Source: Guillardia theta CCMP2712 (taxonomy: Eukaryota > Protista > Cryptophyta). From it: a DNA stretch of 64,000 nt. Numbering within the stretch: the stretch's first letter is position 1; every line of letters starts with the position of its first letter. Positions 57,001 to 62,631 of this stretch are shown here, one piece after another. The notes beneath the pieces were generated by a model. That model did no database searches. It had not been told where the DNA came from and worked only from the letters and a program-made list of their open reading frames with translations. The stretch lies in NCBI RefSeq assembly GCF_000315625.1, contig NW_005434664.1, positions 464,167 to 528,166 on the forward strand. The letters are read 5' to 3'. The position numbers and the translations under genes were made by a program.

Positions 57001-58075
57001 GAGGAGGGAGCTGATGGAGCATCTCGTGTGTGTGTGTTTGGAGCAGCAAGAAGAGCTCGCGAGCAACGTGGAGGTCGAGAGATCTCACGTCGTTGCCGCG
57101 AACTCTGATGTTTGAGGACGAGCAGCGCGACAAGAGCGTAGAGACGAAGACGAGCAGAGGAGAGGAGAAGGGAGGAGAGGAGAAGATAGGGGGGATGGTG
57201 AAGCGGGATGGTGAAGAGGAGAAGAGCTGGCAGAAGAGAATTCAAGACGCCCGGGAGCTTGCGAAAAAGCTCTCGGGCATCGCAAAACTTCCTCGTCCTA
57301 AGGCTGCGGGCAGACTGGAGGGGCTGGAGGCAAAATACATGCAGCAGCAGCAGCAGCAGCTTGAGGAGGAGGAGGAGGAGGAGGAGGAGGAGAAGGAGAA
57401 TACTCAGAGGTGTCTGGATGCAAGAGCTTTCACCCGCTGATCTAGCATGGCAGAGTCAAGGAGGAAGTTCCGAGCACGCAGTACACGCGGCGAGGAGGAG
57501 GCGGGAAGGAGGACAACGAGTTCCACAACCTCATGGACGTGAAAGAGCAGAGCACTGCCCAGCGATCGCTCAGTGTTAGTGAGGACGCGACGTCAAGCGA
57601 CGAGGATGAACTGGTCGTGCTGGACGTGGCCTGTGATCAGCCTGCTGCTCGTGCTGAAGTGAACCCTCCCCTCCCTCCCCTCCCCTCCCCTCCCCTCCCC
57701 TCCCTCTCCTTCCCTCCCCTCCCTCTCCTCCCTCTCCTTCCCTCCCCTCCCTCCGCTCCTTCCCTCCTCTCCTCTACCTGACCCATCACTGATACATGCC
57801 AACAGCTGGAGGCCCCGCGTGAGCTGGAGGAGGCGAAGTCAGGCACGGCAGGGCTGGAGGAAGCAGCAGAGAAACCAGTAATGATGGACCTGCTCTTGCC
57901 CCCTCCTCTCCCTCCTCTCCCCTCCACCAGCTTCTCTCCTCTGCTGTCTCACTGACTCGGCACAGACTCCGGCGAGGAGGTTGAAGACAAGTATGCGAGT
58001 CAAGGCTGGCACAGGAGCAGCGAGCAGGAAGACACCAACACTGAAATATCCAACGAGAGAGACGAGGAGGTGAAA
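54030..58075 (+). CDS. RhoGAP-like + PH + ankyrin + coiled-coil protein
   Basis: DPHAIASLIVYFLRD..LPAEN..LAQLFGPLLIR (GAP fold), GGPLLKYSSRGRP..LSW..LRMW (PH), EGNTVLIVACQN and RGDTCLHFC (ankyrin). The 3' exons are approximate. Confidence 0.82.
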
Positions 58076-58223
58076 TAAACAAGTCTATTCAATACCATAC
58101 ATCTCATCAGAGTCTTCCTCTCCTCTCTCATCCCCTCCCTCCCCTCCTTCTTCTCTCCTCCTCCCTCCCCTCCCAACTAAAGTTTGGTCCTCTTGCTCTG
58201 CCCTGACTCCCTCGGGATCACAT

Positions 58224-61200
58224 TTACTTCTTCATGAGCTCTGCTCGAAGAGCCTCGACCTCCTCCTCCAGCATCACATTCTTAGTCCTCAGATCCGCCA
58301 CCTGCTGCCCGTCAATACACCCAAGCTCCAGTCCTCTTCGCTTCCTCCGCTCCTCTCCAACTCCTCCCTCTCCATCTCCTCTCCTCTCCTTCTCTTCTCT
58401 CCTTCTCTCCTCTCCTTCTCTTCTCCGCCTTGTCTGTTTCCTTTCTCTTCACTCTTTCATCTCTCCCGCCTTTTCTCACCTCCGCCTCCAGGTCAGCCTG
58501 CGTGCCGCTCGCAAAGTCGCTGATCTGCGAGTCGAAGAGGTCAGACTGGAGAAAGCCAGGGAGCAAATGCACAAGCAGATGAATACAGGAGGAGGAGGAG
58601 GAGGAGGAGGGGGGAGGAGGAGGAAGTAACTTGAATCCAAATAATTATTATACCCAATGTTAAAATCTGTCCAACTACGCTGTCTTCTCAAGCATTGACG
58701 CGAGAGTCTCAGAATGAAGTATTCCTGGATGTTCTGGAAGAGGCTTCTGATGCCGGAAATTCGATTCACAGCAGAAATTAAAGCTTCACGCCGAAATGGT
58801 CAACAGTCCCCGTTTANNNNNNNNNNNNNNNNNNNNNNNNNNNNNNNNNNNNNNNNNNNNNNNNNNNNNNNNNNNNNNNNNNNNNNNNNNNNNNNNNNNN
58901 NNNNNNNNNNNNNNNNGAGGAGGAGGCGAGGATTCACCATAGCGCGGAGGTCATCCTTAGAAAGCTCATCTTGCAGTCTCTTGACCTCCGCCTGTCATGG
59001 TTTTCAGCTTATCTCAACCTTGCCCTCCGTCTCCTTCACCTGCAGCTTCGCGATCTCCGCGTCCTTTGCAGGGTCTCCTCCTCCTCCTCCTCCTCCTCCT
59101 CCTCCTCCCTTCGCCACCTGCGCCTTGAGCTCCTCCACTTGTCCCTGGCATCGCTTGAGCTCAGCCTGCAGTCGCTGGATCTCCGAGTCCTTCCTGCCGC
59201 AGCTCTCGCAGGGCTCGGGGTTAGCGGCAGCCGGCATTGAGCGACTCTCCTTCCTCAGCTTCTCCACGTCGCTTCTCAGCCTCTCGTTCTCGCTCGAGCT
59301 CCGGTCCAGCTGTCGTTGGAGATCCGCCACCATCGCGTCAGAGTTGGAGGAAGCGGCGCGAGGGGCCGCAAGTCCTCTAGTCTTGAGCTCCTGCAGCTCC
59401 TGCAGCAGCCTCTCCTCCACTCGCTGCACCTCCCCGCGACGCTCTCGCGCCTCCTCTTCCGCCATCGCCAGCTTCGCCTTGAGGTCTGCGATCTCCCGGT
59501 TCTGCTGGCTCAGCTTCGCCTGCACTTGCGCGGCTTGTGCGGTGTATCGCTCGGCCTCCTGCAGCGCCTTTTCTGACTTAGCCACGCTCTGAGCCTCCGC
59601 CTCCGACAGCTTGTCCCGCAGCTCCTCGATCAGCTGCTGCTGCTGCTTCTCCACCTCGCTCCCCTCCCCGTCCACCAGCAGCGCCGCGTCGTCCAGGAGG
59701 TCCGGCCGAACTCCCTTGGGCGCAAGGTCCTCGAGCTGGTAGCGCAGGGAGCGGTAGGCCTGGTACAACTTCCTGCTCCTCCTCGCGTACGACATGCCCT
59801 GCTCCCGAGACTTCCGCAGCTCCTCCTGCAAGTGATCTTCGCGGGCTCCGTAAGTCTGCACGAGCTCCTGGAACATGGCGTCCACAGAGGCTCGGAGCTC
59901 AGCCGTGATGATGCTGGTCTCCTGCTCGAGGGTGCCGCTGCTAAGGCCCTTGTTGACCTCGGAGGAGAGGTGAGAAACGTCGCTGATGTACTTGTGCAGC
60001 TTCTCACGGTAGCTCTCCGACAGCTGCGTCATCCTCTGCCTCAGTTCTTGAGTCTCAGACTGTAGCTGCGCCTCTACCATCGCCTTCTCGTTCAGCTCGT
60101 TCTCCATCTCTGCTGCTCGACGAGACGCTTGCTTGAACTGCGCCTGTACTGTCGCCATCTCCTCCTCCAGCTTCTTCATCACTCGCTTGTGCTCTTCTCC
60201 CCGGTCCACCAGCTCCTGCTTCAGGCTCAAGAGTTCTTCTCCCTTGTTCTGTTCGTAGGTGGCGTACGTCCTGTCGGCCACCAGCTTCTGCTCTTGGAAC
60301 TGAACCCTCATCGCTTCGAACTCCAGCCTCGCCCGCTCCTTCTCAGTCTTGAGATCCTCCACCTCACGCTGCAGCTGTCGGATCAGTTCCGCGTTCTCCT
60401 TCAACTCCGTCTGACTCTCTGCCATCCTTCCCTCTAGCTCTGAGTTCATCTTCAGAATGTTCTCCCGCTGCGCCTGCAGCTGCTCGCGCTCTCTCATCAG
60501 CGCGTTCTTGGTGTTGACGAGGTTCAGCAGCTCCAGGCTCAGCTCCTCCGACCTCGCCTTCTCCGCGTCCAGGTCGTTGAGCACTGAGCTGTAGTTGGAT
60601 CGCACTGCTGCGATCTCATCCTGGCAATCTTTCACCAGCATTGTGTCGTCGCGGTGCTGGGACTGTAGCCGTTCGATCTCCTTCTGCTTCGTCTGCCCCT
60701 TCATCTCCAGTTCCACGATGTTGTTCTCAAGCTGCAAGATGCGGTTCTGCAGCTGGAACTCGGTGTCCACCGCCTGCTCCATTAAGTTTGTGTTTTCGAT
60801 CTGCAGGTCCACCAGAACTTTCGAGACCTTGAGTTTCTCCTCTTCGCTCTGGATGCGCTCCTGCTGTAGCTGGCTCTTCTCGGACAGCAGCTGGTTCACC
60901 CTCGCGTTGACTTGCGCCAATTTCTCTCGCAGCTGCTCGCGCTCCTCGATCAACGCGAGTCTCGCCTTCTCATCTTCGATGATCTTCTTCTCCAGCTTGT
61001 GGATCTCCAGCAGATGATTCGTCAGTCGATCGTCAACGTCGAGCCCTCCAAAGCCGGCGGCAGCAAGCTGCTGGCGGAGAAGATGCATCTGATTGTTGTA
61101 CTTCCGTAGCAGCGCAATCTGTTTGCCGTCATTGACAACAGGGAAGTTGCGAATTTTGCCGAAGAGCTGCGAAAACTGGAGAACAAACGAGTTTGCACGA

Positions 61201-62252
61201 TAATCAGCTGGGGGGATGGTAGTGAAGATGAGGGTGCGACTGCTTCCTCCAAGTACGTCGGGGAGGAGGGCAGTCAGTTTTGATTGCCCAAAGTCGATGA
61301 ACTCCATATCCTGCACGTCATGCGCCTGAGCCAGCGCCTTCACAACTTGACCAAAGGATGTGATACTCTGATTGAGTGTAGGGCCCTCGCGAATGCGGAG
61401 GGTCGTCGCGTCTTCAGCGAGTTTCTCAGCTCCAGGCAGGTCGATGACGAGGAAGCGGGAGAAGAGGTGCTCCTCCACCGGCTTCAGCAGCCCGATGGCC
61501 GAGTGAGTCACCACCTGGTGGAGCTCCAGGCTGAAGATGCTGGAGGATCGCTCGCTCAGGTTTCCAAACTCATTCCTCAGGGTTGTGCGGGACGACTGAC
61601 CAACGCGAAAGTGATGGTAGAGCTCATCTTCCGAGTCCACCCACTTCCGCGTCAAGTTCCTGATCCCCAGGCCGTCGTTGATCCCAAACTCGTTGATCTC
61701 CAGCTCCATCTTCTGAGGGTTCAGCAGGTCGTTGATCTTCTCATCCACGATTTCTATGTACTGCACGCTCAGCTTGAACCGCCACTTCTGCGACTTCTTG
61801 CGGAGAGTTTGCTTCCCTGCTCCGAACTCCTCTGCCTTGCTCCTGATCCCCTCGAACACTCCGTTGATCAGGCACGGGATAACGCCATCCCTCGAAGCTG
61901 GTCCAGACCCTTCGATGGTGTAAGACTTCCCGCTCATGGAGTTGCCGAAGGCAACGATCGAGCAGTTCACTCCTTCGAGGAAGCCTGGAGTTCCCTGCTC
62001 GTCTCTCGTGATCATGGGAGACATTGATCTCTCATACGCTTGTTCAAACCCGCTGTCGATATAAGTGAAATCATTCGGATACTCGTCAGCAGTGGTCCCT
62101 TGCACCTTTCCGACATCAAGAAGTACGATTTTCTTCTGGTTGTCAATAACCCTCAGATCTCCAGCCCTTCCTTCATCAGGAAGCAGAGGTCGGATTCGAA
62201 CTACGTTCAACACCGGAACCCCCAGGCCTGACAAGTTGGTGCCTGCCTCCAT
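58224..62252 (-). CDS. Divergent kinesin motor fused to a CCDC78-like (DUF4472-like) coiled coil
   Basis: VVRIRP, FGNSMSGKSYT, YIEIVDEKINDLL, IDLPGAE, LNQSI, SKLTALL..LGGSSRT. The coil carries EEEKLKVSKVLVDLQIEN, TYGARED..YQAYR and ISDFASGTQADLE. Confidence 0.88.
58817..58916. other. Assembly gap (100 N)
   Basis: N run inside a kinesin intron. Confidence 1.
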
Positions 62253-62631
62253 CTTCTACAAGGTGACTATCTGTTCCACTGCTCTGTTCTTTCTCAGTCT
62301 CTTCGCCTCCTGGGCTCTCACTTCCTCGGGTTTGCTCTCTCTGCTTCTCCTCTTCTTCTCCGCCTTCTCTCGCTTCCCTCCCTCCCCTCCACCATTGTTC
62401 CTTTCCCTGCCGTTGGCCGTTACGAAGAGCGGTTATCATTGTCGGATTGATGTAACACGGATGATGGGTGACCTTTTACATTTGACTAAATTATTTGTAC
62501 CAGACATCATAGCTCAATAAAGTTGAGTAAATAAATAAAGAGTTGAAGTTGGTAGGAAGCAACGGTTGGGCATGGTGCGGGTAGGATGGGCAACGGGATG
62601 CGCCCGGCCGGCGGTAGGGATGAAGGTGAAG

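What the first reader, a model, noticed from the sequence alone, without database searches (positions are those of the whole stretch)
58224..62252. Switch-degenerate kinesin fused to a CCDC78-like centriolar coiled coil
Seen: the P-loop is intact (GNSMSGKS), but switch I reads NLSERSSS instead of NxxSSRSH and switch II reads DLPGAE instead of DLAGSE. The H(V/I)P(Y/F)R motif reads FIDFG. The tail carries three collinear blocks recalling vertebrate CCDC78 (SKxLVDLQI, Y.ARE..AYR, DF..GTQA.LE). Known: CCDC78 is a centriole/deuterosome-associated protein without a motor domain in mammals. Inference: this may be an ancestral pseudo-motor form of CCDC78 that binds nucleotide but may not hydrolyse it or move, acting at basal bodies.
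Basis: partly seen in the sequence, partly recalled or inferred. Interest (0 to 1): 0.7.

Follow-up and report, generated by a model that had tools for sequence, protein, structure and literature searches.

The report
Kinesin-headed CCDC78 with degenerate switches
This is a real gene of the alga Guillardia theta for the ancient, kinesin-headed form of the ciliary-tip protein CCDC78; this domain fusion is already published for Tetrahymena, but its motor-like head lacks the standard catalytic switch I in every relative examined, so it probably holds on to microtubules rather than walks.

Summary
On the minus strand, 62252..58224 encodes a four-exon gene for about 1129 aa in Guillardia theta. It has a kinesin head (Pfam E 1.9e-50), a full-length DUF4472/CCDC78 domain (E 3.3e-23), and two further blocks shared with vertebrate CCDC78.

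The assembly gap (58817-58916) lies in intron 2. In five orthologues the residues of exon 2 and exon 3 are contiguous, so no coding sequence is lost.

All motif readings are correct:
- The P-loop is kept.
- Switch I reads SERSS instead of SSRSH.
- Switch II reads DLPGAE.
- The L12 motif reads IDFG.

Within the same genome, 25 of 29 other kinesin loci keep NxxSSRSH; only this gene was seen to carry altered switches.

None of 55 distinct CCDC78-linked heads has SSRSH. Only 36 keep the Walker A motif, yet the heads are as conserved as the tail and form one clade (SH-aLRT 99).

The fusion occurs in cryptophytes, a glaucophyte, a rhizarian, a stramenopile, Mantamonas, ciliates, invertebrates, a lungfish and a caecilian. 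It is therefore ancestral.

The fusion itself is already published for Tetrahymena I7LVY1, a ciliary-tip cap candidate. Published evidence points to the ciliary tip rather than basal bodies. This is a new member of a known kind. The family-wide pseudo-motor state is a modest new point.

The parts
59040..62252 (-). Exon 1: ATG to ...AKLQ, 1071 codons, followed by a GTGAAG donor. It holds the kinesin head, the neck, DUF4472 and most of the coiled-coil tail.
   Evidence: ORF list; exon end and donor; orthologues P0002 and P0003 start with the same MEAGT... residues.
61170..62198 (-). Kinesin motor-like head, residues 19-361.
   Evidence: Pfam PF00225, E 1.9e-50. PDB phmmer best hit KIF13B, E 2e-32. 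AlphaFold2 model with pLDDT 91.7. Foldseek matches kinesin motors with TM-scores of 0.8-0.88 normalised to the target.
61917..61949 (-). P-loop FGNSMSGKSYT, residues 102-112. Walker A GxxxxGK[ST] is intact, but the Q of the canonical GQT is N.
61533..61568 (-). Degenerate switch I FGNLSERSSSIF, residues 229-240. The canonical N is G, SSRSH is SERSS, and the Arg is kept.
   Evidence: In-genome control.
61410..61448 (-). Switch II VIDLPGAEKLAED, residues 269-281. D, G and E are kept; A is replaced by P and S by A.
61272..61304 (-). L12/alpha5 motif EFIDFGQSKLT, residues 317-327, in place of the canonical (H/F)(V/I)PYRDSKLT.
61059..61154 (-). Neck: the conserved N-F-P-V-x-N-D motif, then a helix at residues 376-398 in the model.
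   Evidence: Family-wide conservation (P in 54 of 56, N in 44 of 56). Secondary structure of the model.
60528..60848 (-). DUF4472 / CCDC78 signature domain, residues 469-575, containing SKVLVDLQIEN.
   Evidence: Pfam PF14739, positions 1-107 of 107, E 3.3e-23. It is the only such locus in the genome.
59718..60020 (-). Second CCDC78 block, residues 745-845: SESYREKLHKYISD ... YGARE ... LYQAYRSLRYQLEDLAP.
   Evidence: Aligned with bowfin CCDC78 inside a 458-residue BLASTP alignment, E 4e-25. Conserved in alignments A1 and A4.
58992..59039 (-). Intron 1: 48 nt, GT..AG, with an in-frame stop at 59004-59006 if it is read through.
   Evidence: Orthologues continue ...KLQ|A(E/R)VK... without the read-through residues.
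58938..58991 (-). Exon 2: 18 codons, AEVKRLQDELSKDDLRAM.
   Evidence: per-exon alignment to five orthologues.
58525..58937 (-). Intron 2 (GTGAAT...GCAG), which contains the assembly gap 58817-58916.
   Evidence: in five orthologues the residues of exon 2 and exon 3 are contiguous, so the gap hides no coding sequence.
58480..58524 (-). Exon 3: 15 codons, ISDFASGTQADLEAE. This is the third CCDC78 block.
58302..58479 (-). Intron 3 (GTGAGA...CAG), GA-rich and of low complexity.
58224..58301 (-). Exon 4: 25 codons, VADLRTKNVMLEEEVEALRAELMKK, plus the TAA stop.

Best explanation
This is the single Guillardia theta orthologue of CCDC78 in its ancestral, kinesin-headed form. It is a four-exon gene for about 1129 aa.

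Shown here:
- The N-terminal 400 residues fold as a complete kinesin motor domain with a neck.
- The rest is a long coiled coil that is homologous, block by block, to vertebrate CCDC78.
- The head keeps the Walker A P-loop but lacks the canonical switch I, as does every relative examined. In many relatives the P-loop, the switch I Arg and switch II have also decayed.
- The head stays as conserved as the tail.

Inferred:
- The head works as a nucleotide-holding microtubule-binding module, static or rigor-like, and not as a stepping motor.
- The coiled coil dimerises it and recruits partners. In frog the partner is CCDC33, which the authors of PMC12796433 suggest is the orthologue of Tetrahymena C2D1.
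- By transfer from Tetrahymena and vertebrates, the site of action is the distal tip of the 9+2 flagellum, probably at the central-pair plus ends or cap, where it would stabilise or bundle microtubules and help set flagellar length.

G. theta keeps Walker A, the switch I Arg and the switch II D..G.E triad. Its head may therefore still change microtubule affinity with the bound nucleotide, even if turnover is slow.
For: - Domain content.
- Gene model and gap.
- Single DUF4472 locus in the genome.
- Tail homology to vertebrate CCDC78 over 458 residues. A tail profile finds 699 proteins at E<=1e-3. These include named vertebrate CCDC78.
- C-terminal block conserved through to vertebrates.
- Among the 157 CCDC78-tail proteins then held, 88 carry a head or part of one.
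- Motif counts in 55 distinct heads: SSRSH in 0, Walker A in 36, switch I Arg in 17, switch II D..G.E in 21, and all three in only 11, G. theta among them.
- Canonical kinesin-3 sequences aligned to the same profile show SSRSH, DLAGSE and PYRDS.
- In-genome control: 25 of 29 other kinesin loci have NxxSSRSH.
- Head identity among close orthologues is 61-71%, equal to that of DUF4472.
- The heads form one clade, SH-aLRT 99.
- Every carrier that has a name builds cilia or flagella: Guillardia, Cyanophora, Plasmodiophora, Hondaea, Mantamonas, Blepharisma and animals.
- Literature: I7LVY1, a kinesin with a CCDC78 domain, is reduced at least fourfold in FAP256/CEP104-knockout cilia and is proposed to bind central-pair microtubules in the cap (PMC10522465). 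[quoted passage not shown]
Against: - No biochemical or localisation data exist for G. theta.
- The tip assignment for Tetrahymena rests on proteomics of a mutant, not on imaging of the protein.
- G. theta and its near relatives conserve S-E-R in switch I and DLPGAE in switch II. This argues for a still-working nucleotide pocket, and possibly for hydrolysis.
- Vertebrate CCDC78 also sits at deuterosomes and apical foci, so a role at the flagellar base is not excluded.
- Outgroup sampling in the tree is small: 15 kinesins.
Confidence: 0.6

Rival explanations
1. It is still an active, though unusual, plus-end-directed motor that carries itself and its coiled-coil cargo to the flagellar tip. On this view the switch I variant S-E-R-S-S supports hydrolysis, with the Glu standing in for the Mg-coordinating Ser.
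For: Walker A, the switch I Arg and the switch II D..G.E triad are all present in G. theta and in 10 other heads. S-E-R is conserved among the close orthologues. The neck-linker motif N-F-P-V-x-N-D is among the best conserved parts of the head. The fold is predicted with high confidence.
Against: No head out of 55 has SSRSH, and the N of NxxSSRSH is a conserved Gly. In most lineages the Arg, Walker A or switch II have been lost while the head is retained, so the shared function cannot depend on catalysis. The L12 PYR microtubule-contact motif is also altered.
Confidence: 0.25
2. One reading: a pseudo-motor that acts at basal bodies or centrioles, as vertebrate CCDC78 does at deuterosomes.
For: Vertebrate CCDC78 localises to deuterosomes and apical foci, and its knockdown lowers centriole number (cited in PMC10522465 and PMC12796433).
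Against: Deuterosomes are a speciality of animal multiciliated cells, and G. theta is a biflagellate. The only protist datum, from Tetrahymena, comes from isolated cilia and depends on the tip protein FAP256. Vertebrate CCDC78 is also at the extreme distal tip, where its loss disorganises all other tip proteins.
Confidence: 0.12
3. An artefact: a chimeric assembly or gene model that joins a kinesin gene to an unrelated coiled-coil gene across the gap.
For: An assembly gap lies inside the stated coordinates, and the public model GUITHDRAFT_65705 is partial.
Against: Head and DUF4472 lie in one uninterrupted 1082-codon ORF well away from the gap. The same architecture is found in dozens of independent assemblies and transcriptomes. 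The exons on either side of the gap match contiguous orthologue residues.
Confidence: 0.01

Closest known systems
Tetrahymena thermophila I7LVY1, a kinesin motor catalytic domain protein with a CCDC78 domain (PMC10522465; PMC12796433)
   Same: The same two-part architecture and a similar length (1066 aa against about 1129 aa). I7LVY1 is the only member of the headed form with published data: it is depleted from cilia lacking FAP256/CEP104 and is proposed to bind central-pair microtubules in the tip cap.
   Different: A different supergroup (ciliate against cryptophyte). A ciliate relative, Blepharisma P0176, shows FGPLSDKATT in switch I and DLPGMEKL in switch II. The papers do not discuss degeneracy of the catalytic motifs.
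Vertebrate CCDC78 (Pfam DUF4472, PF14739), a protein of deuterosomes and of the extreme distal tip of motile cilia
   Same: Tail homology is collinear over about 450 residues (E 4e-25 with bowfin), and the C-terminal [DE]F..NTQ..LE block is shared. The family profile finds named CCDC78 of fish, snake, echidna and manatee.
   Different: Mammalian, snake and most fish CCDC78 have no head. The lungfish (P0178) and caecilian (P0179) proteins named CCDC78 still carry it. The head was therefore lost within vertebrates, not before them.
Kinesin-3 motors (KIF1A/B, KIF13B, KIF16B, unc-104)
   Same: These are the best sequence and structure matches for the head. As in kinesin-3, a helix follows the neck linker.
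   Different: Identity is only 24-30%. There is no FHA or PH domain. The switch I, switch II and L12 motifs differ. The CCDC78 heads form their own clade, apart from the kinesin-3 sequences sampled.
Non-motile or catalytically impaired kinesin-like proteins (KIF26A/B, KIF7, Vik1/Cik1); named from general knowledge, not tested here
   Same: A kinesin fold kept for microtubule binding while stepping is lost. KIF7 is cited as a cilium-tip organiser in PMC10522465.
   Different: They are unrelated lineages within the superfamily, with different tails and different patterns of motif loss. No shared ancestry is implied.
Kinesin-17 and Kinesin-16 of Wickstead et al. 2010, cilium-restricted families without known function (PMC2867816)
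   Same: Restricted to organisms that build cilia.
   Different: The Kinesin-17 entries seen in their table have canonical, high motor-domain scores of 449-500 bits. The family motifs LPGAEK and REGPTL are absent from the part of their alignment files that is held. The CCDC78 heads were probably left out of that classification as 'divergent'.

Membership tests
Kinesin superfamily (PF00225) | Motor-domain sequence and fold | tested here: met
   Pfam 172 bits against a cut-off of 29.3. AlphaFold2 pLDDT 91.7. Foldseek E down to 2.6e-28 against kinesin motors.
Kinesin superfamily (PF00225) | Walker A P-loop GxxxxGK[ST] | tested here: met
   GNSMSGKS at residues 103-110.
Kinesin superfamily (PF00225) | Switch I NxxSSRSH | tested here: not met
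   Reads GNLSERSS: N is replaced by G, the second S by E, and H by S. None of 55 family heads has SSRSH. 25 of 29 other G. theta kinesin loci have it.
Kinesin superfamily (PF00225) | Switch II DLAGSE (minimal form DxxGxE) | tested here: inconclusive
   DLPGAE keeps D, G and E but not the consensus A and S. Whether this supports catalysis cannot be told from sequence.
Kinesin superfamily (PF00225) | Microtubule-stimulated ATPase and motility | not testable with these tools
   Needs purified protein.
CCDC78 / DUF4472 (PF14739) | Full-length DUF4472 above the gathering score | tested here: met
   82.8 bits against 26.6, positions 1-107 of 107.
CCDC78 / DUF4472 (PF14739) | Collinear homology to vertebrate CCDC78 outside DUF4472 | tested here: met
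   BLASTP over 458 residues, E 4e-25, with bowfin CCDC78. C-terminal block shared.
CCDC78 / DUF4472 (PF14739) | Localisation at the ciliary tip or deuterosome; binding to CCDC33 | not testable with these tools
   Known only from PMC12796433 and PMC10522465, for other species.
Kinesin-3 | FHA domain after the neck, and clustering with KIF1/KIF13/KIF16 | tested here: not met
   No PF00498 hit. The heads lie on the other side of a 99% SH-aLRT branch from three kinesin-3 motors.
Kinesin-17 (Wickstead 2010) | Clustering with their Kinesin-17 sequences | tested here: inconclusive
   Only indirect: family motifs are absent from the held part of their alignment, and the Kinesin-17 entries seen score as canonical motors. 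No joint tree was built.

The most novel reading that the evidence does not exclude
The CCDC78-linked heads may be a separate kinesin family that dates back to the last eukaryotic common ancestor and is restricted to ciliated organisms. [quoted passage not shown] Vertebrates such as frogs and mammals later shed the head, while lungfish and caecilians kept it. That would make CCDC78 a 'pseudokinesin', and would explain how the tip complex recognises microtubule ends.
Probability: 0.45. Interest if true: 0.6.

Novelty: new member of a known kind. Interest (0 to 1): 0.42.

Why it matters
[quoted passage not shown] How it finds and holds microtubule ends is not known.

The headed form is the ancestral and most widespread form. 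The head has lost the canonical catalytic switch in every relative examined, yet remains strongly conserved. Together these give a concrete, testable idea: the tip module was originally anchored by a rigor-like kinesin head.

The work also corrects the public G. theta gene model, which is partial and has a doubtful internal intron. It further shows that some vertebrates still carry the head.

Tried and rejected
- RNA evidence for the introns. The look-up of sequencing runs listed 15 runs that hold the stretch or part of it (13 hold half of its words or more), from six studies, none on record as RNA.
- The joined, spliced protein was never sent to a search tool. Exons were compared one by one, and all searches used exon 1 or parts of it by reference.
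- A full-text search for 'DUF4472' found no paper.
- PMC12258958 (Legal et al. 2025) is not held. Its preprint, PMC11642885, does not mention the kinesin-CCDC78 protein.
- Kinesin-17 identity was considered and found unlikely.
- The Tetrahymena I7LVY1 sequence itself was not recovered by any search, so its motifs were not read directly. A ciliate relative (Blepharisma) was used instead.
- Chimeric assembly was rejected.
- Complex prediction was not used, because no specific partner sequence from G. theta was in hand.
- The search of earlier findings returned nothing on this gene.
Full report
**What is there.** The window comes from the nuclear genome of the cryptophyte alga Guillardia theta CCMP2712. 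The nearest database protein is the partial model GUITHDRAFT_65705, at 96-98% identity. On the minus strand a single open frame runs from the ATG at 62252 to a stop at 59004 (1082 codons). Pfam finds a kinesin motor domain at residues 19-361 (E 1.9e-50) and a complete DUF4472, the signature domain of CCDC78, at residues 469-575 (E 3.3e-23, positions 1-107 of 107). Both domains lie in one uninterrupted exon, so the fusion cannot be an assembly or gene-model artefact.

**Gene model and the gap.** I tested this first, as asked.
- The frame leaves exon 1 at 59040 (...AKLQ, donor GTGAAG).
- Three short exons follow: 58991-58938 (AEVKRLQDELSKDDLRAM), 58524-58480 (ISDFASGTQADLEAE) and 58301-58224 (VADLRTKNVMLEEEVEALRAELMKK, then stop). 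All are in phase 0 with GT..AG borders.
- I aligned each exon separately to five orthologues (P0002, P0003, P0004, P0005, P0008). Exons 2, 3 and 4 land on directly adjacent residues in all five, for example P0002 1083-1100, 1101-1115 and 1116-1140. In P0003 and P0008 the end of exon 1 also abuts exon 2.
- The gap 58817-58916 therefore lies inside intron 2 (58525-58937), and no coding residue is missing.
- The predicted product is about 1129 aa, against 1128 and 1141 aa for P0003 and P0002.
- The joined spliced protein was not sent to any search tool; all searches used exon 1 or parts of it by reference.
- RNA support could not be obtained. Nothing from those places was sent anywhere afterwards.
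- Thirteen sequencing runs, from six studies that hold the stretch, each hold half or more of its sampled words, but none is on record as RNA. That is no evidence of expression.

**The motifs.** HMMER alignment to KIF13B, and alignment of canonical kinesin-3 motors to the same family profile, give this comparison:

| Element | This gene | Canonical |
|---|---|---|
| P-loop | FGNSMSGKSYT | YGQTGSGKSYT |
| Switch I | FGNLSERSSSIF | MNETSSRSHAVF |
| Switch II | IDLPGAEK | VDLAGSER |
| L12 | FIDFGQSKLT | FIPYRDSVLT |

- Walker A is intact.
- The Asn of NxxSSRSH is Gly. The second Ser is Glu; from general knowledge of kinesin and myosin active sites, this Ser is the Mg-coordinating one. The His is Ser.
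- The switch I Arg and the switch II Asp, Gly and Glu are kept.
- This is not a habit of the genome. Among 29 other G. theta kinesin loci, 25 show NxxSSRSH and 27 show DLAG.E.
- An AlphaFold2 model of residues 1-421, built on 52 family heads, has mean pLDDT 91.7. It matches kinesin-1, -2, -3, -4, -5 and -7 motor structures about equally well, with TM-scores of 0.8-0.88 normalised to the target and 23-28% identity. The fold is complete, but the head belongs to none of those families.

**The tail.**
- A profile of residues 405-875 and the matching parts of seven relatives was run against 1.84 billion representative proteins. It found 699 proteins at E<=1e-3 and 69 at E<=1e-30.
- Named members include CCDC78 of bowfin, electric eel, cobra, echidna and manatee.
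- The G. theta tail aligns with bowfin CCDC78 over 458 residues (25% identity, E 4e-25).
- The third block, in exon 3, is the cryptophyte version of a family-wide C-terminal motif, [DE]F..[NG]TQ..LE followed by a short coiled coil. That motif is also present in bowfin and echidna CCDC78.
- G. theta has only this one DUF4472 locus.

**The family.**
- Of the 157 tail-bearing proteins then in hand, 88 carry a head or part of one N-terminal to the tail.
- Pfam confirms Kinesin plus DUF4472 in Cyanophora paradoxa, Plasmodiophora brassicae, Hondaea fermentalgiana, Mantamonas plastica and the hemichordate Glandiceps.
- Further headed members, by the Pfam hits precomputed for the search database or by the family head profile, are the ascidian Phallusia, the flatworm Macrostomum, the jellyfish Sanderia, the ciliate Blepharisma, the lungfish Protopterus and the caecilian Geotrypetes.
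- All named carriers build cilia or flagella.
- In a maximum-likelihood tree of 71 motor domains, the 56 CCDC78-linked heads sit on one side of a branch with 99% SH-aLRT support. On the other side are eight G. theta paralogues and seven kinesin-3 or other motors.
- The fusion is therefore old and arose once. The headless form of mammals and many other vertebrates is derived. Because lungfish and caecilian keep the head, it was lost within vertebrates.

**Degeneracy across the family** (55 distinct complete heads).
- None has SSRSH.
- The Gly in place of the switch I Asn is present in 48 of the 56 aligned rows.
- 36 keep Walker A GK[ST], 17 keep the switch I Arg and 21 keep the switch II D..G.E triad.
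- Only 11 keep all three, among them G. theta, its close relatives and Cyanophora.
- Structural and family-specific motifs stay well conserved: FGP, LPGAEKL, REGP.LN, SKLT.LL and the neck motif NFPV.ND.
- Among close orthologues the head is 61-71% identical to that of G. theta, the same as DUF4472 and more than the rest of the tail.
- A domain that is kept under selection while its catalytic residues drift is the usual signature of a pseudo-enzyme. The shared function of the head cannot depend on normal ATP turnover.
- G. theta sits at the least degenerate end of the range, so a nucleotide-dependent switch, or slow hydrolysis, remains possible in this species.

**What is known.**
- The fusion has been published. 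Legal et al. 2023 (PMC10522465) list Tetrahymena I7LVY1 as a predicted kinesin that also contains a CCDC78 domain. [quoted passage not shown]
- Hong et al. 2025 (PMC12796433) show that frog, mouse and human CCDC78 occupy the extreme distal tip of motile cilia, bind CCDC33, bundle microtubules and control cilium length. They note that the Tetrahymena relative has a kinesin domain absent from vertebrate CCDC78.
- Neither paper discusses the state of the catalytic motifs, the breadth of the fusion or its retention in some vertebrates. My searches found no other paper that does.
- The cilium-restricted Kinesin-17 of Wickstead et al. 2010 is not this family, as far as can be told. The Kinesin-17 entries seen in their table score as canonical motors, and the family motifs are absent from the held part of their alignment.

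**Verdict.**
It is probably wrong about where the protein acts: the flagellar tip is better supported than basal bodies. It is unproven on catalysis.
- The most likely mechanism is a coiled-coil dimer whose two kinesin-like heads hold microtubule ends at the flagellar tip, while the CCDC78 tail organises the tip module.
- For G. theta this makes a new member of a known kind.
- The family-wide loss of canonical switch I, the single origin of the heads, and the retention of the head in lungfish and caecilians are modest new points. They make the anchoring idea directly testable.

Noticed in passing
window 59925-59985 (minus strand, inside exon 1): The public model GUITHDRAFT_65705 (P0001) is truncated at both ends. 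It also splices out 19 residues (VSHLSSEVNKGLSSGTLEQ) that the window's ORF keeps. Orthologues P0002-P0005 keep the matching KYISDVSHLS... segment, so the annotated intron is probably wrong.
   Followed up: partly
P0178 (Protopterus annectens) and P0179 (Geotrypetes seraphini): The lungfish and caecilian proteins named CCDC78 still carry a kinesin head (942 and 943 aa, PF00225 plus PF14739). In the caecilian the P-loop has decayed (LGEWDSKKSQM). The literature describes vertebrate CCDC78 as headless.
   Followed up: partly
P0012 (Ciona intestinalis F6Z7A4) and P0025 (Lottia gigantea): These invertebrate models are headless, although another ascidian (Phallusia, P0009) has the head. They may be incomplete gene models rather than true losses.
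   Followed up: no
window 57650-57780, 58090-58180, 58330-58480, 62330-62400: Long CT-rich (GA-rich on the other strand) runs of low complexity, of the CCCTCC type, fill the introns and intergenic spacers around the gene. One of them (58382-58423) tripped the reads tool's filter.
   Followed up: no
window 57533-58080 (+ strand): ORF fragments on the + strand (for example 57533-57781, acidic and Ser-rich) suggest a convergent neighbouring gene that ends about 150 bp from this gene's stop codon. It was not analysed.
   Followed up: no
genome G000: G. theta gives 99 exon-level matches to the kinesin profile, with at least 30 distinct loci fetched. Among the loci matched over nearly the whole profile, the CCDC78-linked head scores among the lowest (176 bits, against 300-390 bits for the top-ranked, mostly full-length, matches).
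   Followed up: partly
window 59070-59105 (minus strand, exon 1): A run of 11 Gly codons (GGA repeats) lies near the C-terminus. Orthologues P0005 and P0008 have a poly-Gly run at the same place, so it is a conserved flexible linker before the last coiled coil and not an assembly oddity.
   Followed up: no
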